This document shows positions 10,273 to 62,079 of a stretch of 63,886 bases of DNA, one piece after another. A model generated the notes under the pieces. The model saw nothing but the letters and a program-made list of their open reading frames with translations. It was not told where the DNA came from and did no database searches. The stretch covers positions 20,342,945 to 20,406,830 of the forward strand of contig NC_058132.1 in the NCBI RefSeq assembly GCF_016433145.1, read 5' to 3'. Each line of letters begins with the position of its first letter. The stretch's first letter is position 1. The position numbers were made by a program, and so were the translations under genes. Source of the DNA: Gracilinanus agilis. Lineage: Eukaryota.

Positions 10273-11407
10273 GATGACACTGTTTCTGTACTCCCTATAG
10301 TGGACAGGACTATCCTGCAATCTGGGGAGGGTATCATGCATGTGAAGTCATACAAGGCTTTTACTCCAAATGATCTGAAGGTACTCAGGAGGCGCTTCCC
10401 CCAATTTTTCATCTCTCCTTTCAAAAGTATAAAAAAAATGAAATGTGTCTTCACCCTATTCAACCCTAGCTTTGATGACATTGAATTTCTTTTGGGGGAG
10501 TTTTATTCACCCTCTGAGGAGAAGTTTTTGGCCTAAACTCGCACGAACCCTAACCTCACTGCTTGGCCTATGGTCCACCATGACCTGGAGTTAACATCTC
10601 ATGCAAATAGGAAATACCTGGTCCAATGCTGGACAGATTTACTTGAAGCAATGTGGCTCCATGCAAAAAGGCCAAACTCTTGGAAAAAATTTGAAAAGCT
10701 TAGGCAAGGAGTGGAAGAACACCCTAGCAGCTTCCTGGAGAGGGTAATGGAAGCAGCTGAGACAATACTAGGCCTTAGAGATGTGCATGCCCCAGAGACT
10801 ATCGATCATATTAGGAGGCAGTTTGTGAAGGGTGCTTCACTGCCAGTCCAGACCTATTTCTGGCAGAACTGTCCTCGGTGGGAATCATTGCCACTAGAAG
10901 ACATCAGGCAACATGCATCCTATATCCATTATTTCAAGCAAAAGGAGGTCAGGAAAGCTAGACAATCAGATTCAGAAAAGGACTCTGTATAGCTGATCTA
11001 AAAAGGCAACTTAAGCAAAGAAGGAAAAAGAAATCGAGGAAATAAAGAACTTCACCCTCCAGGCCAGTAAGGGGCATAGTCAATTCAGGCAGCCTGCTAG
11101 TGTCACCAAGCCCAAAACCTCTTCCCAAAGGTGTTATCTGTGTGGCCACCAAGGTCACATGGTTCTCACATTCAGGTTCAAACAACAAATAGACTTTGGT
11201 AGGGCTAACAACAATCCCAACCAGAGAGATAGGAACAATAAGAGGACATTTTACAACTCTAAATGGTCAAGCAATTCAGGAAGAGTTCAGGGCACGAAAC
11301 ATGATGACCAGTGTTGCAACCATTCTTGCAAGAGGTACAGCCAGTCTCAATCACTAGACCAAATGGAGAAATTCATAGCACAAGGTGAAATTCTGAAGTC
11401 CTTATGA
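10273..11407 (+). pseudogene. gag: ERV gag remnant (capsid plus nucleocapsid)
   Basis: MHR-like QGVEEHPSSFLERV; in-frame stop at 10534-10536; frameshift before the knuckle CYLCGHQGHMVLTF (11132-11173, last Cys replaced by Phe). Confidence 0.88.
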
Positions 11408-11559
11408 ATCGAGGCTTCAGGATCAGAAATGATTAACTGCAACAAGGACAAGGACGTGTGTATCACTAACCTAGGCATAGTGAATGTTTCTCAAAGATTG
11501 GGCATGGGAGAGCATATGTCTCTAGCAAGCTGCACAGAAAACAACGATATTTCTGTGGC

Positions 11560-12090
11560 AGAAGACCAAGAATGGGAGGATATAATGCAAATGAGCAAAG
11601 AGATTTATGGGGCAATTGAGGATGACTATAAAAGGAGTCTGCTTTCTCATTCCACTGCAAAAGGCTTGGATCTGAAGCAAAAGGACCATCCAAGAATTTG
11701 TAAGGGCTTTCCTCCAGAAGCTTTACAATCTTGGTTAGACATGGACATCCACCTTACCAAGGGAAGTCACTTCAAAGCATCCATAACCTATCACATCTGG
11801 GTATGGAATGCAAGCTCTATGAGTACATTAAGTTTCTCAAACAGCACTTAGATCAGCTTCATAAGTTGGCTTTGATACATCAAAGAATTCCCTTTGATTT
11901 TAGTCTATACAACTTCCAGCCTGGAGATTATGTCTACATAAGAACTTTTATGAGGAAGTCTGTGTTAGAACCTAAATGGCATGGACCATCCCAAATAATC
12001 TTAATGACCCCTAGTGCAATCAAAGTTAAGGGGAGGGATCCATGGTTCCATGTCACCCATGTCAAGCCAGCAAAAGATATGTCCCAATAA
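11560..12090 (+). pseudogene. pol: ERV integrase C-terminal remnant
   Basis: FQPGDYVYIRTFMRKSVLEPKWHGPSQIILMTPSAIKVKGRDPWFHVTHVKPA matches the gamma-type IN C-terminal pattern; no protease or RT motifs seen upstream. Confidence 0.85.
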
Positions 12091-24906: not shown

Positions 24907-27560
<2,654 letters not shown>

Positions 27561-37769: not shown

Positions 37770-38900
37770 TCCTACACATTTTGACATATATTGTCTCATT
37801 GCTGTCAATATCTTTCATGAAATTATTGTTTCTATGATTGGTTCTTTGATCAACTCATTCCTTAAGGATTAGATTATTTAGTTCCAATTAATGTTAATTT
37901 GTGCTTCCAAGATCATTTATTGAATTGTATTGTGGACCCTCAAAAGGTACATTTTATCATTTTACTTGTCTGCATTTGTTATGAAATTTTTGTCGGATAT
38001 ATGGTGATTAAAAAAATCTTTTTTATTGATTAAGAAAAAATTTCCATAGTTCCATGATTCATGTTCTTTCCCTCTCCTCCTCCCAGCCCCCTCCCATAGC
38101 CTATGTGCAGTTCCATTGGATTTTACATGTATCATTGATCAAGACCTATTTCCATATTATTGATATTTGCATTAGGACCATCCTTTAGAGTCTATATCCC
38201 CAATCATATCCCCATCGACCCATGTGATCAAGCAATTGTTTTTCTTCTGTGTTTCTACTTTATATGGTGAATTTTTGAGAAGGTGCCATTTACATTTGAG
38301 AAATTCATATACTCTATTCTGTATTCATTCAAATTCTCCAGAAGTCTATCATATATAATTTGTCTAAAATTCTATTCATTTCCTTAATCCTTTGTTGTTT
38401 ATTTTATGGTTAGATTTATCCACACCCGAGAGGAATACATTTAAGTCCTCCATTAATATAGTTTTACTATCTCTTTCTTCCTATAACTCATTTAACTTTT
38501 CCTTCCAGAAGTTGGATGCCATTATTATATTTGGATGCCAATATTAATTCACTGTCTGTGCTGTCTTTTAGCAAAATGTACTTTCCTTGATTATCTCTTA
38601 CAGTTGGAGCTATTTTTGCTTTGTTCTGAGATCATGATGGCAACTATTCTACATGCTAAAGCATGAGATTCCGTTCTAGACCACTATTTTAACTCTATGA
38701 GTGTTTTCTATTTGCAGTGTCTCACATAAATAACATATTGTTGGATTCTGGTTTCTAACACATTCTTCTATTCTCTTTCGTTTTATCAGTGAGTTCTTCA
38801 TATTCACAATTATAATTGCTCTAACTGCATATTGCCCAGCATCTTCTCCTTTTTTCTTTCTTGTTCTCTTTTCCCCCTTTTCTTTTTGTTCAGTAGTCTC
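37770..38900 (-). mobile_element. L1 ORF2 endonuclease-region fragment with a nested L1 3-prime end
   Basis: Reverse-strand decayed EN-like text (ggaggacttaaatgtattcctctc...gataaatctaacc); poly-T tailed L1 end at about 38030-38250. Confidence 0.7.
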
Positions 38901-39110: not shown

Positions 39111-40042
39111 GCACCCACCCTCTTCCAAAGTCTGTTTTACTTCTGATTAGGAACTCTTAACCTCCTGGATCTACATTCTCTCTTAACCTGGCCCCTTCTC
39201 TTAGCCCCTTTCTCTCTTACTTGCCCAATTTGGTATATACATCTACATATATAGGCATAGACATATACACAGCCTTCCTCTAGTCAAGCAGGATTTAGGG
39301 ACTGGTCAATTCTAGACTGACCACCATTGCTCTGAGCAAACCCATCCTGGATACGGTGCCCTAATAGCCCTCAAGGATCCCCAGAGGTGAGCAGGGGTCA
39401 CTGGGACAGGAGATACACTCAAGTCAGCTCCCTGTAGAGCAGAGGCTTCTCTCCAAGCCTCCATGCTCAAGGCCATTCTCACCAAGTGGAGATCCAGACC
39501 TGGTCTGTTGGGCAAGGATGGCCTCCACATGCAAGGACAGCCTCAGAGCACCCTGGAAGTGTTCTAAGGAGGGAGCTCTCATTGGCCAGTCCTTGCCACG
39601 TCCCCCAGCCCCATCTCGCTCACTAGAGTGACCTCACAGGGCTGTGAAGAGGAAAATGAAGCAGCCAGTCAGGCCAAGAGCTGTCCTGGTTCCTGCCTGC
39701 AGCATCTCTTCTTGGGGAACAGTTGTCTCTGCTTGCATCAGTCCTAGCTATTCTCATCTCTGGTGGGAGAGTGGGAAGAGGGGACAGGGGCAAGCCTGTG
39801 AGTGGGAGGGAAGAGAGACAAAGCAGAAGCCAAAGAGAGGAAGGGAGGAGCTGGCTGTTAGCAGAGTATAAGGAAGGGAGGCCAGGACCAGGTGCCAAGG
39901 GCAGGGATGACCCTCTGTGGAGCTGGCAGAGCCATTTCCTCCAGACTGGTGCCTCCTGGGGGTCGCATATTCCCCAAACCCCGGTTCGATCTTCCTGTCT
40001 ATCTTGACTGGCTGCTCACACAGGGTCTCCCCAGGGGGTTTC

Positions 40043-40161
40043 TCAGGGTCCCCTCCAGCTGGTCCAGGCTTCAGCCAGCAGGATGCCCATGATGAGGAGC
40101 ACCAGGCCAGCCAGGCCAAGACGAATCACATTGCCAGTGGTGTAATCCTGGGAGGCAGCAT
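40043..40161 (-). CDS. LRC-type Ig receptor: transmembrane and tail exon
   Basis: Acceptor ccccctcag|at, phase 1; DAASQDYTTGNVIRLGLAGLVLLIMGILLAEAWTSWRGP*; matches the YT..N..R motif of FcR-gamma-coupled LILRA/FCAR/GP6/NCR1-type receptors. Confidence 0.93.
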
Positions 40162-41479
40162 CTGAGGGGGCAGAGGCTGTCACTGAGATAGAGGCAGGGC
40201 CTCCCCTTTCCCAGGAGCGCCAGGGTGCCACTTCCAGGCTACTCAGAGCCCAGCCACTGACCTGAGAGCCTTTAGTGCTCATTAGTCTGGGGATGTGGGT
40301 GAGAGCTGGGGGGCCCCCAGGCTCCAGGGGCTGCAGCTGACTCTCCCCCCTCTCCCTCAGGCCTTCTCTCCCCTGTCCCAGGTCTGTCTCTCCCTATGAC
40401 TTGTTGCTTCCAATACTCTGTGGATCTCCTGTTTGTGCCACACTCCTTCCACGTGGCCTCCACTGGCCCAGGAGCTCCCTGGGAGCCAGGACTTTTGTCT
40501 CTCTGTGTATCCACAGCACTGAGCCCCGTGTCTGGCACATAGTAGGAGCTTAGTAAAGAGTTAACTGACTGTCCAGCTCTGACACCTGAGGATTCTGCCA
40601 TCTGGTGACTCTCTTGTCTTGTTGCTCCAAGTGGGAGGGAAAAGCCAGAGAGCAGGAGGAGGAGCTGGTGGGGGGAGAGGAGCCCTCTGAGTCCTCCTCA
40701 GGGCCTCTTCTCAGGCTCCAGAGAGCTGAGGTCCAGTCAAGGCTCCAAGTCCTGACTAGGTCAATGGGACCCAGCGCTGGACAGAGGAGGGAGGTGAGGA
40801 CATCCCTCCAGTGCTTCCACTTACTGGGAATTGGGCTGAGAGGAGCTAAGAGTTTCCTCTCCTGCCAGCCAGGCCTGGAGGAGGGGAGGGAAGGGATGGC
40901 AGAAATAGGGCATCTTCATTTGGGTCAAGGCCTGGGATGCCCTGGGGCTGCTGGGCAAGGGGAGAGAAGGGCTGGGGCTCCCTCACTCCATCAGCTCTTT
41001 CTTCCCTGGGCAGCTGCTGCCCACCTTCCATGTCCCTGCCTGGATCTTCACCTTCCTCACTTCAGGGTGCCAGGAGGGGTGGGATGGAGACAGAGGGGGA
41101 GGGGAGGAAGGACGTGGTTCTCTGAGGGCTCCCAGAAGAGCCAGGCAGGGAGGAATCCATAGAGAGGGGGCAGGAGAAGAGGGAGGCGCCAACACTGAGA
41201 CCTGAGCCTTCCCCTGCCCTTCTCCTGGCTCCCCTGGACCTCCTCAAGCTAGAAATCCTAGAAAGGACCCAGCAGACCCACTGTGTGCCCCGAGGGAGCA
41301 GGGCTGAGGGGTCAGGGGGAGGGGAGGGTCTCCCTGGGATTCCCCCATTGCCCAGACTCTGGTCCTGTGTGTGAGCCCCTTCCCTCCCCACCCACCAGCC
41401 TTGCTGGCCTCTGGAGAGCAGGGCCGGGGGTGGCCCGGGGTGGCCCGGGGTGGCCCCGGGGCGGCCGGGGTCCGCTTAC

Positions 41480-41773
41480 CCAGCAGCCGGAGTTCCAGGG
41501 GCTCGCTGGAGGCTGACCACTCATAGGGAGCGTCGCTGTGGAAGGTGTAGCATCTGTAAGTCCCTCCCTGGGCCGCAGTGCCGGCCGGGAGGGAGAAGTT
41601 GGTCTGGGCGCCCCTTTGCTGCCTCTGGGCCGCGCCCAGGGCCACCTGGCCTCCGTCCTTGTACAGAGCAGACCTGTCGTGCCACAGCTTTGCCTGGCAC
41701 TGAAGGGTCACGTTCTGTCCTGAGGCCACGTCGAGGCTGGGCAGCGCCCGCAAGGAGGGTTTGCTGGATCCGC
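41480..41773 (-). CDS. LRC-type Ig receptor: Ig domain D2
   Basis: 294 bp, phase 1-1; SKPSLRALPSLDVASGQNVTLQC...GGTYRCYTFHSDAPYEWSASSEPLELRLL; sequons NVT and NFS. Confidence 0.95.
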
Positions 41774-42024
41774 CTGGGGAAGGAGGCGGCGGGCTTAGCA
41801 GAGACACTCCCTCCCCTCCCGGGGCCCAGGCAGAGCTGGGAGAGGGCCAGGGCGGTGCCAGGCCCTTCTCTTGGCTTGGGGCAGGGCAGGGGCGAGCCCC
41901 AGGGAGCCGCCACGTGCCGGGTCTCCCGAGAGCAAAGCTGGCTCCTGCGGAGGAGGCAGCAGCCCCAGAGAGGGGAGGCCAGAGGCGGCACCGCCTCGGC
42001 CAGGGCTCGGGGCCTTCCTCTCAC

Positions 42025-42315
42025 CTGTCACCACCAGCTTCAGGGGGTCGCTGTTCTCCGAGCAGCCTGATTGGCTCCAATAGCAGCACCTATAGACCCC
42101 CCCATGGCTGGCCGTGACAGACGACAGGAGGAACTCGGCCTCCAGGGCAGCGGCCGGAGGCATGACCATGTATTCATCCGCGTAGCCGGAGGGTCCTGCC
42201 TTCCTCAGGATGAAGAGATGAGCCCGAAGAGGCCCCCGACACCAAAGGCTCACAGGCTTGCCCTGGGGGGTCACCGAGGCGGGCTCAGCCCTGAGGGAGG
42301 GTCTCAGGGATATGC
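42025..42315 (-). CDS. LRC-type Ig receptor: Ig domain D1
   Basis: 291 bp, phase 1-1; LRPSLRAEPASVTPQGKPVSLWC...GGVYRCCYWSQSGCSENSDPLKLVVT. Confidence 0.95.
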
Positions 42316-42506
42316 CTGGGAGGGAATCAGAGACCAGAGTCCCAGCGGGTCCCCCCGAACCACCCGGCCTGCTCCTCCCCGCCGCCCCTCTCTGAGTCTT
42401 CCCATCCCAGCAGCCCAGACTCTCCCTCCCTCCCCTCCCCTCCCCCTGGGCTGCCTTGGAGGCCGTTGGCTGTGCCCGGTGGGCTGGGTTTGGGCAAAGG
42501 ACTTAC

Positions 42507-42542
42507 CCTCTGGAGCCTGCATCCTCTCTTCCAGACACAGCC
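42507..42542 (-). CDS. LRC-type Ig receptor: second leader mini-exon
   Basis: 36 bp, cctctag| and |gtaagt; LCLEERMQAPE; canonical LRC leader architecture. Confidence 0.92.
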
Positions 42543-42771
42543 CTAGAGGAGACGCTCCGGGTTAGACTGAGCTCTTCTAGAACCCCCATCCTTGCCATGA
42601 AGCCCGAGGGACAGCGGCCGGACACCAGAAGACCCGGCTCCCCTCCCCCCCTCTGGGCCTTAGTTCCCTTTTCTGTCAAGTGGGCTTTCGGGCTGGACTC
42701 GGTTTGCCCGAGGTTCCTCCCAGCTTTCGGAGTCTTCTGAGAGGCCTCGGAGCTCTGCCCCCAGCACTCAC

Positions 42772-42805
42772 CCAGGCACAGCAGGACCCGGAGTCTGGAG
42801 GCCAT
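42772..42805 (-). CDS. LRC-type Ig receptor: first leader exon
   Basis: Perfect Kozak GCCACCATGG; 34 bp MASRLRVLLCL(G); donor gtgagt. Confidence 0.93.
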
Positions 42806-52193: not shown

Positions 52194-52693
52194 NNNNNNN
52201 NNNNNNNNNNNNNNNNNNNNNNNNNNNNNNNNNNNNNNNNNNNNNNNNNNNNNNNNNNNNNNNNNNNNNNNNNNNNNNNNNNNNNNNNNNNNNNNNNNNN
52301 NNNNNNNNNNNNNNNNNNNNNNNNNNNNNNNNNNNNNNNNNNNNNNNNNNNNNNNNNNNNNNNNNNNNNNNNNNNNNNNNNNNNNNNNNNNNNNNNNNNN
52401 NNNNNNNNNNNNNNNNNNNNNNNNNNNNNNNNNNNNNNNNNNNNNNNNNNNNNNNNNNNNNNNNNNNNNNNNNNNNNNNNNNNNNNNNNNNNNNNNNNNN
52501 NNNNNNNNNNNNNNNNNNNNNNNNNNNNNNNNNNNNNNNNNNNNNNNNNNNNNNNNNNNNNNNNNNNNNNNNNNNNNNNNNNNNNNNNNNNNNNNNNNNN
52601 NNNNNNNNNNNNNNNNNNNNNNNNNNNNNNNNNNNNNNNNNNNNNNNNNNNNNNNNNNNNNNNNNNNNNNNNNNNNNNNNNNNNNNNNNNNNN
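52194..52693. other. Assembly gap (500 N)
   Basis: Run of N. Confidence 1.
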
Positions 52694-54400: not shown

Positions 54401-55207
54401 TGGCGAATTGGGAGGACCCAAGATGGATTTCGAAGAATAGTGGAGAGGGTCAGCCAGGCAACCCCCATTAAGGGCCAGTTACTGTCTGGCCGCTGTGCAC
54501 AGGAGATAGGGAAAAGGGCAGAAGGTAGTCCCTGCCCTCCAGGAGTGCACAGTCACACGGGGAGACAAGAAGCTGACAGACGGGTCCAAAGGAGATCTGG
54601 GTAGGAGGAAGAGGAGCCAGCCTCGGAGGGAAGGCGCTGAGATCAAGGGGGACCAGAGAAGGCTTCCGGTGGAAGGTGGAGAAGGATGACGATGGCCAGG
54701 GCAGACGTGGGAAGCTGTAGGCTACCATCATCATAACAAGGATGAGAACTTTGATGGGTGCCGGCCTTTGGCAGAGGAGACTGAGGCGCAGGAAGCTTTT
54801 AAAGCTTTACAGATCTGGGTCATTCTCTAGCCTAACCCCTTCAGTTGCTTTTTTTTTTTTTTTAAACTCTTACTTCCGATCTCAGTAGCTATTCTAAGAC
54901 ACAAGAGTGGCATGTGACTTGCCCAAGGTCACACCGTTAGGAAGTGCCCGAGCCTAGATTTGAACTCGGCTCCTCCCAACTCCAGATCCGGCGCTTTGTG
55001 CAGCTGCTTTGATAGATGAGGCTCGGAGAAGAACAACAACTCTCTCGAGGTTACCCAGCTGGTGTCAAAGCAGAGATTTGAACCGAGGCCCTAGGGGTGG
55101 GGGTGGGGGGTGGGTCGGGCCCTTCCCACCTGCTCACTGTATCCCCGGTGTTGGGGGAGGCCGGCGGGAGGGAGCAGGCTGAGGAATTGGCCCGGTCCGC
55201 TCCCCAG

Positions 55208-55698
<491 letters not shown>

Positions 55699-55737: not shown

Positions 55738-55743
55738 AATAAA
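55738..55743 (+). terminator. TNNI3: TNNI3 polyadenylation signal
   Basis: AATAAA 40 nt after the stop. Confidence 0.85.
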
Positions 55744-60607: not shown

Positions 60608-60668
60608 GCCCGTGGTGCCGCCACTGATCCCGCCAAAGATCCCCGAGGGCGAGAGGGTCGACTTCGAT
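60608..60668 (+). CDS. TNNT1: TNNT1 exon 7
   Basis: 61 bp; RPVVPPLIPPKIPEGERVDFD. Confidence 0.96.
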
Positions 60669-60854
60669 GTGAGTCATCCCGGGAGCTGGGGGTGGGGGGC
60701 GAGGAGGAGCGGGCGGGGCTATCCTCCGGGGTTTCTGGCTTCGCGTTGGCGCGCTCAACACTGAGAATGCACATGGCGCCTGGTGGCTGGCTGGCGCGGG
60801 GGACCTCGGAAACGAGGTCCCCACCAACCCCTCCGCCCCAAATGCCACCCTCAG

Positions 60855-60971
60855 GACATTCACCGGAAACGCATGGAGAAAGACCTTCTGGAGCTGCAGA
60901 CCCTCATCGACGTACACTTTGAGCAGAGGAAGAAGGAGGAGGAAGAGCTCGTGGGGCTGAAGGATCGGATT
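60855..60971 (+). CDS. TNNT1: TNNT1 exon 8
   Basis: 117 bp; [39 protein letters not shown]. Confidence 0.97.
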
Positions 60972-61324
60972 GTGAGTGTCGGGCCCTCCTCCGCCCCGCA
61001 AAACCCCGAGGCAGATGTCACCGGCCTCACAGACGGGAAAGGGACTTGCCCGAGCTCATAGCAGGGGATGAGGGTCTCTGGCAAAGGAATCTGACCAGCT
61101 GGCCCTCGGGTCCACGGTTCTAGGACCTGGAAGGTGACTCCAGCTGTATGGGGAGAAAGAGCACAGGGTCTGAGATTTAAGAGCACCTTGGAATCCACCT
61201 TTCCATTTTACAGAGCAGGAAACTGGGGTCCAGAGGAATACAGTGACTTTTGTGCAGAGGTCAAGGTCGCATTATAAGCTGGAACTTCTAGAGAGCATTG
61301 AATGCATCTCTTATTTTAGAGGCC

Positions 61325-61470
61325 ACTGTGTGACCCTGGGCAAGTCATTTCACCTTTGTCTGCCTCAGTTTCCCTCAACTGCAAAATGAGGATAATAATA
61401 GCATCTCCCAAGGTTGCTGTGAGGATCCAATGAGATAATAATTGTAAAGTGCTTTGCAAACCTTAAAGTA
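61325..61470 (+). mobile_element. MIR-type SINE
   Basis: ctgtgtgaccctgggcaagtcatttcacc...cctcagtttccc...aaaatgaggataataatagc...gtaaagtgctttgcaaac. Confidence 0.85.
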
Positions 61471-61711
61471 CTATAGAAACACTGTAATTGTTATTATTAT
61501 TATTAGGAGGGGGATTGAGACCCCAAGAGCTAGAAGAAGGGATGCTCCCAGGACCATGAGAATCTGGGTCAGAGCTGGAAATCGGAGCCTCTGATTTCCT
61601 TTCTATCCTCTCAGGCTTCCTTCTGACTCTCCCAGGAGTTATGAGGTGTCGTGGGGAAATGGGGGACCAGGGAAAGACCCTTTGTGGGGGGCAATCCTCT
61701 CCTCTGTGCAG

Positions 61712-61789
61712 GAACGTCGAAGAGCTGAGAGAGCCGAACAGCAGAGAGTCCGCACGGAGAAGGAGAGAGAACGCCAAGCCAAGCTGGCC
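61712..61789 (+). CDS. TNNT1: TNNT1 exon 9
   Basis: 78 bp; ERRRAERAEQQRVRTEKERERQAKLA. Confidence 0.97.
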
Positions 61790-62079
61790 GTGAGGCTCCC
61801 CTTCTTGCTCTCCCAATCGCAGAGCCTTCCGGCTCCTTTTGTTTTCTGCTGTGTGGTGGGCCCCCAAGCCAACCCCTCCTGGGGCCTCAGGTTCCCTGAT
61901 CTCTCAATTGGGGGGCCTGGATTCTGGGGTCTGCAGGCCCTCCCTGTTGGGACGCTGTCTGAGCAATGACTTCACCAGGGAAAAGGATATTTAAGCAGGC
62001 TCCTATCTAGGCAAAGCTTACAGGTTCCACCCTGGAGAGAGCCTCTCTGGGCCTCAGTTCCTACATAAATGAATGAATG

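What the first reader, a model, noticed from the sequence alone, without database searches (positions are those of the whole stretch)
40043..42805. Unnamed two-Ig activating receptor of the marsupial leukocyte receptor complex
Seen: 34-bp and 36-bp leader exons, two phase-1 Ig exons and a TM exon (DYTTGNVIRLGLAGLV...) that splice directly into a 257-aa protein with a tail of about 7 aa. Established: this exon layout and a TM arginine mark the FcR-gamma-coupled LILRA/FCAR/GP6/NCR1 class. The tail lacks ITIMs and lacks the basic and proline-rich motifs of GP6. Inference: a marsupial-lineage activating receptor with no one-to-one eutherian orthologue and an unknown ligand.
Basis: partly seen in the sequence, partly recalled or inferred. 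Interest (0 to 1): 0.7.

Follow-up and report, generated by a model that had tools for sequence, protein, structure and literature searches.

The report
Marsupial two-Ig activating leukocyte receptor gene
This is an intact-looking gene for a small two-domain immune-cell surface receptor of the large, already described marsupial leukocyte-receptor family, so it is one more member of a known kind, and whether it is expressed could not be tested.

Summary
On the minus strand, five exons (34, 36, 291, 294 and 119 nt) have canonical GT/AG sites and all junctions in phase 1. They add up to 774 nt, which is 257 codons plus a stop.

The two large exons are LRC-type Ig domains. The last exon encodes a transmembrane segment with the DYT...NxxR...E signature of FcR-gamma-coupled LRC receptors and a tail of about 6 residues with no tyrosine.

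All close relatives are marsupial proteins:
- D2 sits inside an all-marsupial "M2" clade (support 100/98).
- D1 pairs only with a Monodelphis protein (74% identity). That pair branches beside all other sampled marsupial "M1" domains (support 84/66).
- Identity to human LILR, KIR, GPVI, OSCAR, LAIR1 and NKp46 domains is only 26-46%.

This is the "M1M2 + NxxR-TM" architecture that Guselnikov and Taranin (2019) describe as typical of the expanded marsupial LRC (MAIR family), which is already known to lack eutherian orthologues.

The Monodelphis counterparts are annotated, fragmentarily, as "LILRA6". The gene lies alone between a KRAB-ZNF gene and the TNNI3-TNNT1 pair.

Two things were not done. 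GPVI, FCAR, NCR1, OSCAR and TARM1 sequences could not be brought into the trees.

The parts
42772..42805 (-). Exon 1 (34 nt): start codon and first part of the signal peptide (MASRLRVLLCL + first base of a Gly codon)
   Evidence: ATG at 42805 in a GCCACCATGG context, donor GTGAGT
42507..42542 (-). Exon 2 (36 nt): rest of the signal peptide, phase 1 in and out
   Evidence: AG acceptor and GTAAGT donor. The same stretch is recognisable in the Monodelphis model P0017, where it is read in another frame, so the DNA is conserved
42025..42315 (-). Exon 3 (291 nt): Ig domain D1, an outlier of the marsupial M1 / eutherian A1 type
   Evidence: Pfam Ig_2 E=7e-12. AF2 pLDDT 93.5. 74% identical to Monodelphis P0017 and at most 52% to anything else. 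Tree
41480..41773 (-). Exon 4 (294 nt): Ig domain D2, marsupial M2 type, with two N-x-S/T sites
   Evidence: Pfam ig and Ig_2. AF2 pLDDT 89.7. 68% identical to Monodelphis P0004 and bilby P0001. Inside the all-marsupial M2 clade with support 100/98
40043..40161 (-). Exon 5 (119 nt with TGA): DYT motif, NxxR transmembrane segment, acidic residue near its end, tail of about 6 aa
   Evidence: Translation. 80-84% identical to the C-terminus of Monodelphis P0004, which also ends in RGP. Motif definition from PMC6557307
40467..40556 (-). Stalk-like stretch inside the D2-TM intron. It is homologous to a 23-aa stalk in the Monodelphis model P0004 and is probably not used as an exon here
   Evidence: 53% identity to P0004 residues 229-254. 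In the window the position matching the Monodelphis donor reads GG, not GT, and the only nearby GT is in phase 0, which would put the TM exon out of frame (read)
39136..39141 (-). Nearest poly(A)-signal variant (AGTAAA), about 0.9 kb after the stop. The first canonical AATAAA is at 38403, inside LINE-like sequence
   Evidence: Pattern scan and sequence. Weak evidence only

Best explanation
This is a protein-coding gene of the marsupial leukocyte receptor complex, the MAIR family, with the 'M1M2' two-domain architecture. It encodes a type I membrane protein made of a split signal peptide, two LRC-type Ig domains, a transmembrane helix with an arginine in an NxxR motif, and a tail of about 6 residues with no signalling motif.

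Mechanism (inferred, not shown): the buried arginine pairs with the transmembrane aspartate of an FcR-gamma dimer. Ligand binding by D1/D2 would then signal through the adaptor's ITAM and Syk, making this an activating receptor on leukocytes.

The ligand is unknown. D1 belongs to an old, divergent lineage found so far only in this genome and in Monodelphis. D2 is an ordinary marsupial M2 domain.
For: - Gene structure: five exons with canonical splice sites, all in phase 1, open frames, a Kozak ATG, and both Ig cysteine pairs present.
- Domains: Pfam Ig_2/ig hits, and the best solved-structure relatives are LILR, PIR-B, KIR and GPVI. AF2 models are confident Ig folds.
- TM exon: it carries DYT, N-x-x-R and a C-terminal Glu. 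PMC6557307 describes these as the conserved FcR-gamma-associating TM subtype, found in 45 of 74 opossum LRC TM exons.
- Splicing pattern: annotated marsupial relatives (P0001, P0005, P0008, P0009, P0012) also go straight from D2 into a DAAPQDYTVGN-type TM exon, and several end near ...RGP.
- Trees: D1 pairs with Monodelphis P0017 (100/100) and D2 with Monodelphis P0004 (100/95). D2 is nested in the M2 clade (100/98).
- Constraint: exons are 64-80% identical to the Monodelphis models. Where those models read through introns, identity is only 35-47% with many gaps. This suggests constraint on the exons.
Against: - No transcript evidence.
- No canonical AATAAA within 1.6 kb of the stop.
- FcR-gamma pairing is inferred from a motif only.
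- D1 lacks the family's conserved Trp of the 'WSE' motif and has extra cysteines. This could mean altered function or relaxed constraint.
- The Monodelphis models are fragmentary, so the conservation estimate is qualitative.
Confidence: 0.7

Rival explanations
1. It is an unexpressed or decaying family member: a young pseudogene that still looks intact, as is common in expanding LRC clusters.
For: There is no expression evidence and no nearby canonical poly(A) signal. D1 has lost a conserved Trp and gained cysteines. PMC6557307 reports many LRC pseudo-exons in opossum.
Against: All five exons are open, with ten canonical splice dinucleotides and a good Kozak site. The Ig core residues are kept. 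Exons are clearly more conserved than introns against Monodelphis. The D1 lineage is old yet intact in two genomes.
Confidence: 0.12
2. The real transcript differs from the five-exon model. It may include the stalk-like stretch at 40467-40556, as in the Monodelphis model P0004, or use it to make a frameshifted, secreted two-Ig form.
For: P0004 contains a 23-aa stalk that is 53% identical to that stretch. A phase-1 acceptor (CCAG|AC) exists in the window.
Against: The position matching the Monodelphis donor reads GG here. The only nearby GT is in phase 0 and would put the TM exon out of frame. The 53% identity is no higher than for the true introns. P0004 also retains a whole intron, so it is an unreliable model. 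Most annotated relatives splice D2 directly to TM.
Confidence: 0.1
3. It is the didelphid orthologue of platelet collagen receptor GPVI (GP6), much diverged.
For: D2's best human match is GPVI D2 at 46%, against at most 42% for KIR and LILR. NCBI names several relatives 'platelet glycoprotein VI-like'. The gene lies next to TNNI3-TNNT1, and in human (own knowledge) those genes are about 0.1-0.2 Mb from GP6. PMC6557307 finds a GPVI orthologue in devil but names none in opossum.
Against: D1 is nearer to LILR D1 (41-42%) and OSCAR (38-40%) than to GPVI (35-36%). D2 is nested among ordinary M2 domains. There is no mucin stalk and no basic or Pro-rich tail. The gene lies upstream of TNNI3, whereas human GP6 lies beyond TNNT1 (human gene order from own knowledge). 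No RDH13 or NLRP neighbour was seen in the window.
Confidence: 0.04
4. It signals through another adaptor, such as DAP12 or CD3-zeta, or through none.
For: Only a motif links it to FcR-gamma. NKp46 with a TM Arg also uses CD3-zeta (own knowledge).
Against: The whole DYT/NxxR/acidic-end signature matches the FcR-gamma subtype. DAP12-coupled KIRs use a Lys, and PMC6557307 found no such TM in marsupials.
Confidence: 0.05

Closest known systems
Marsupial LRC / MAIR receptors with M1M2 ectodomain and NxxR transmembrane exon (Belov et al. 2007 as cited in, and Guselnikov & Taranin 2019, PMC6557307)
   Same: Two Ig exons (membrane-distal M1-like, membrane-proximal M2), a direct D2-to-TM splice, a DYT...NxxR...E transmembrane segment, a very short tail, and no eutherian orthologue. 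D2 is nested in the M2 clade.
   Different: D1 is an outlier. It branches beside all other sampled M1 domains on a long stem, lacks the conserved Trp, and has an extra Cys next to the canonical one. The gene is solitary, between a KRAB-ZNF gene and TNNI3, and is not in a tandem array within this window.
Monodelphis domestica 'LILRA6' models P0017 (177 aa) and P0004 (292 aa)
   Same: Nearest relatives: D1 74%, D2 68%, TM 80-84% identity, and the same C-terminus ...RGP.
   Different: Both are mis-modelled fragments. P0017 has an N-terminus made from intron read-through, and P0004 retains the D1-D2 intron and adds a stalk. Their shared D1 part differs by one residue, so Monodelphis probably has two loci. 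Whether they are orthologues or paralogues of the window gene is not settled, because the window's species is unknown.
Eutherian activating LILRA / PIR-A receptors (e.g. LILRA5, LILRA2)
   Same: 34+36-nt leader, phase-1 Ig exons, a TM Arg in NxxR, a short tail, and FcR-gamma coupling (the last from established knowledge). D1 is 41-42% identical to LILRA5, LILRA6 and LILRB3 D1.
   Different: Not orthologous. Eutherian LILR D2, D3 and D4 form separate clades. Most LILRA have four domains plus stalk exons.
Platelet glycoprotein VI (GP6)
   Same: Two Ig domains, a TM Arg, and FcR-gamma coupling. It is the best human match for D2 (46%).
   Different: No mucin stalk and no calmodulin- or SH3-binding tail. 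D1 is only 35-36% identical. The chromosomal position relative to TNNI3-TNNT1 is different.

Membership tests
LRC Ig-like receptor superfamily (group A: LILR/KIR/GPVI/FCAR/NCR1 type) | Signal peptide split over a first exon of about 34 nt and a 36-nt second exon, followed by phase-1 Ig exons of about 290-300 nt | tested here: met
   Exons of 34, 36, 291 and 294 nt, all in phase 1, with GT/AG sites. That this layout is typical of the family is own knowledge.
LRC Ig-like receptor superfamily (group A: LILR/KIR/GPVI/FCAR/NCR1 type) | Ig domains most similar to LRC domains: D1 to the A1 type and D2 to the A2 type | tested here: met
   The PDB sequence search is topped by PIR-B, LILR, KIR and GPVI. 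Foldseek gives D1 to LILRB4/LILRA5/LAIR1 D1 and D2 to KIR, LILR D2-D4 and GPVI D2. The tree splits A1/M1 from A2/M2 with support 100/98-99.
LRC Ig-like receptor superfamily (group A: LILR/KIR/GPVI/FCAR/NCR1 type) | Location in the (extended) LRC region, syntenic with human 19q13.42 | tested here: met
   TNNI3 last exons lie at 55207-55386 and 55614-55698, and TNNT1 exons at 60633-61800, all on the + strand. A KRAB-ZNF gene lies at 25003-27132. The human position of these genes is own knowledge.
FcR-gamma-coupled NxxR-TM activating subclass | TM arginine embedded in NxxR, a DYT motif before the TM, and acidic residue(s) at the TM's C-end | tested here: met
   The exon reads QDYTTGNVIRLGLAG...LLAEAW. 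The features are as defined in PMC6557307.
FcR-gamma-coupled NxxR-TM activating subclass | Short cytoplasmic tail without ITIM or other tyrosine motifs | tested here: met
   The tail is TSWRGP followed by the stop, with no Tyr.
FcR-gamma-coupled NxxR-TM activating subclass | Physical and functional association with FcR-gamma that depends on the TM Arg | not testable with these tools
   This needs co-expression or co-immunoprecipitation and an Arg mutant.
Marsupial MAIR M1M2 group | [quoted passage not shown] | tested here: met
   win_D2 falls inside the 33-row all-marsupial clade, support 100/98.
Marsupial MAIR M1M2 group | Membrane-distal domain belongs to the M1 clade | tested here: inconclusive
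   win_D1 + P0017 is sister to the other 29 marsupial M1 domains with only 84/66 support. It was unresolved in the quick tree.
GPVI (GP6) orthologue | Both domains closest to GPVI, a mucin-like stalk, a basic and proline-rich tail, and neighbours RDH13/NLRP2 | tested here: not met
   D1 is 35-36% identical to GPVI against 41-42% to LILR. There is no stalk or tail motifs. The gene lies on the other side of TNNI3-TNNT1. Only D2 favours GPVI (46%). GPVI sequences could not be placed in the tree.
OSCAR / TARM1 / NCR1 / FCAR orthologue | Both domains group inside that family | tested here: inconclusive
   Identity to human OSCAR is 38-40% (D1) and to NKp46 26-31%. FCAR is absent from the top 50 for either domain. 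All of these are below the 47-74% identity to marsupial domains. No sequences of these families could be fetched by reference for a tree, and TARM1 has no solved structure to compare with.

The most novel reading that the evidence does not exclude
The gene is not just another copy from the fast-turnover MAIR expansion. It would be a solitary activating receptor, separate from the main cluster, whose D1 lineage split off before the American and Australasian marsupials diverged and has been kept since. Its remodelled D1 face (conserved Trp lost, an exposed extra Cys next to the core Cys) would point to a distinct and possibly conserved ligand, or to covalent dimerisation.
Probability: 0.15. Interest if true: 0.45.

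Novelty: new member of a known kind. Interest (0 to 1): 0.22.

Why it matters
It adds one correctly modelled member to the marsupial leukocyte receptor complex, where automatic annotation is poor. The nearest Monodelphis models retain introns and lack the leader exons. It also marks a divergent D1 lineage lying apart from the main cluster, beside TNNI3-TNNT1. That may help in reconstructing how the group-A LRC receptors arose. It does not reveal a new receptor type or mechanism.

Tried and rejected
- Opossum DNA and neighbours: the look-up of encoding contigs for P0004 and P0017 returned no DNA because the file was too large, and showed no neighbouring genes within 10 kb. So neither dN/dS nor opossum synteny could be done.
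- Named GPVI, FCAR, NCR1, OSCAR and TARM1 sequences for a tree: the profile word search and the exhaustive search were both flooded by four- to fourteen-domain LILR/PIR-like proteins, and none of those families appeared. I fell back on Foldseek identities to solved human structures.
- One cluster returned is named as human LILRA2 (P0222). I did not use it in alignments or trees.
- Protein Atlas search: only generic LRC clusters.
- Supplementary tables of PMC6557307 are not held.
- A stalk exon like that of Monodelphis P0004 was considered and judged unlikely here, because there is no phase-compatible donor.
- The joined 257-aa model was deliberately not built or searched. Every search used single exons or open frames by reference.

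Full report
**Observation**

The feature is a minus-strand gene. Reading the reverse complement and checking by script gives five exons:
- E1, 42805-42772 (34 nt): ATG in a GCCACCATGG context, donor GTGAGT.
- E2, 42542-42507 (36 nt).
- D1, 42315-42025 (291 nt).
- D2, 41773-41480 (294 nt).
- TM, 40161-40043 (119 nt including the TGA).

All acceptors end in AG behind pyrimidine tracts, and all donors start with GT. Each exon is open in the expected frame.

I did not build or search the joined protein.

**What the exons encode**

- D1 matches Pfam Ig_2 (E=7e-12), and D2 matches ig and Ig_2, above the curated cut-offs.
- Sequence searches of solved structures are topped by PIR-B, LILRs, KIRs and GPVI.
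- AlphaFold models built from alignments A2 and A3 are confident Ig folds, with pLDDT 93.5 and 89.7.
- The TM exon reads ...QDYTTGNVIRLGLAGLVLLIMGILLAEAW, then TSWRGP and the stop. That gives a DYT motif, an arginine in NxxR, a glutamate near the end of the helix, and a tail of about 6 residues with no tyrosine.

Guselnikov and Taranin (PMC6557307) describe exactly this transmembrane subtype as the most conserved element of the LRC family and as the one that associates with FcR-gamma. They found it in 45 of 74 opossum LRC TM exons.

**Relatives**

A word search with D2 found only marsupial proteins, at no more than 68% identity. They came from bilby, Monodelphis, Gracilinanus, devil, Dromiciops and Antechinus. 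NCBI names them "platelet glycoprotein VI-like" or "LILRA5/6".

D1 has a single close relative, Monodelphis P0017 at 74% identity. This held in the word search and in the exhaustive search of 1.84 billion representatives. By single-domain BLAST, every other D1 match is at most 52% identical. The next best are inhibitory M1M2 receptors of bilby and dunnart and a bat LILRB4.

Laying the two Monodelphis models on the window shows that both are mis-modelled fragments of the same kind of gene:
- P0017's N-terminus is read-through of intron 2, plus exon 2 read in another frame.
- P0004 retains the D1-D2 intron and adds a 23-aa stalk.

The exonic parts are 64-80% identical to the window. The intron-derived parts are only 35-47% identical, with many gaps. 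That is qualitative evidence that the exons are under constraint.

**Trees**

I cut all Ig domains out of 40 named proteins (26 marsupial, 14 eutherian) and built IQ-TREE trees.
- win_D2 pairs with Monodelphis P0004 D2 (100/95). The pair lies inside an all-marsupial clade of 33 domains (100/98), apart from the eutherian LILR D2, D3 and D4 clades.
- win_D1 pairs with Monodelphis P0017 D1 (100/100) on a long stem. The pair is sister to the other 29 marsupial distal domains, which include both American and Australasian species. Support for that placement is only 84/66.

So D2 is an ordinary "M2" domain. D1 is an outlier of "M1", possibly old and possibly just fast-evolving.

I could not get GPVI, FCAR, NCR1, OSCAR or TARM1 sequences by reference, because both large searches were flooded by multi-domain LILR-like proteins. 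As a substitute I used Foldseek identities to solved human structures:

| Human domain | D1 | D2 |
|---|---|---|
| LILRA5 / LILRA6 / LILRB3 | 41-42% | not compared |
| OSCAR | 38-40% | not compared |
| LAIR1 | 34-37% | not compared |
| GPVI | 35-36% | 46% |
| NKp46 | 26-31% | not compared |
| KIR (D1) / KIR2DS4 (D2) | 27-30% | 42% |
| LILRB1 D3D4 | not compared | 41% |

All of these are below the 47-74% identity seen to marsupial domains. None of them points consistently to one eutherian gene.

**Context**

This is the only LRC gene in the window. Its neighbours are:
- Upstream on the + strand, a KRAB-ZNF gene (25003-27132) and gammaretrovirus-like fragments.
- Downstream, the last TNNI3 exons (55207-55386 and 55614-55698, + strand) and TNNT1 exons (60633-61800).

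The gene therefore lies head-to-head upstream of the conserved TNNI3-TNNT1 tandem. From my own knowledge of the human map, human GP6 lies on the far side of TNNT1. Together with the missing stalk and tail motifs, this argues against GPVI orthology.

The gene body is 64% G+C, in flanks of 38-42%.

**Open points**

- Expression is untested.
- There is no AATAAA within 1.6 kb of the stop, only an AGTAAA at 39141.
- A stretch in the D2-TM intron (40467-40556) resembles the Monodelphis stalk. In the window the matching donor position reads GG. The only nearby GT is in phase 0, which would put the TM exon out of frame. Most annotated relatives also splice D2 directly to the TM exon.
- The species is a marsupial. 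It is probably a didelphid opossum, because the nearest relatives are Monodelphis proteins and earlier scan notes call the genome opossum. I could not decide whether the Monodelphis proteins are orthologues or paralogues of the window gene.

**Verdict**

The literature already describes this architecture as the typical member of the expanded marsupial LRC, and already states that these genes generally lack eutherian orthologues (PMC6557307; PMC4608214). The finding is therefore a new, well-modelled member of a known kind. It has one mildly unusual feature, the divergent D1 lineage and its solitary position. FcR-gamma coupling and activating function are inferences from the motif.

Noticed in passing
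window 42025-42315 (D1), residues 76, 77 and 84 of the exon translation: D1 has an extra Cys right after the canonical F-strand Cys. The 'CC' is shared with Monodelphis P0017 and P0004. The family's near-invariant Trp of the 'WSE' motif is replaced by Cys here and by Gly in Monodelphis. This may mean an unpaired or novel disulfide cysteine.
   Followed up: partly
P0004 and P0017 (Monodelphis domestica, GCA_027887165.1): Both NCBI 'LILRA6' models are mis-built. P0017 starts in intron read-through and lacks the leader exons, and P0004 retains the D1-D2 intron. Their shared D1 part differs by one residue, which suggests two near-identical loci.
   Followed up: partly
window 55207-55386, 55614-55698 and 60633-61800 (+ strand): These are the last two TNNI3 exons, with an AATAAA near 55740, followed by TNNT1 exons. 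It is the conserved troponin tandem. Earlier TNNI3 exons were not found by motif and may lie in or beyond the assembly gap at 52194-52693. The gap was not filled.
   Followed up: partly
window 25003-27132 (+ strand): A long open C2H2 zinc-finger exon with 16-plus fingers, belonging to a KRAB-ZNF gene that another note of this scan already flagged.
   Followed up: no
window 10570-12090 (+ strand): Gammaretrovirus-like fragments with weak Gag_p30 and MLV integrase C-terminal matches. This is a degraded endogenous provirus. It is described only.
   Followed up: no
window 41425-41470: A short tandem repeat of about 10 bp (GGTGGCCCGG-like, 3-4 copies) lies just inside the D2-TM intron, next to the D2 donor.
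   Followed up: no
window 40043-42805 versus flanks: The gene body is a sharp G+C island (64%) in flanks of 38-42% G+C. CpG observed/expected is only 0.42, so it is not a classical CpG island.
   Followed up: no
window 41795-42274 (- strand): The D1 reading frame stays open for about 77 codons past the D1 donor into the intron. This may explain why automatic models in Monodelphis retain that intron.
   Followed up: partly
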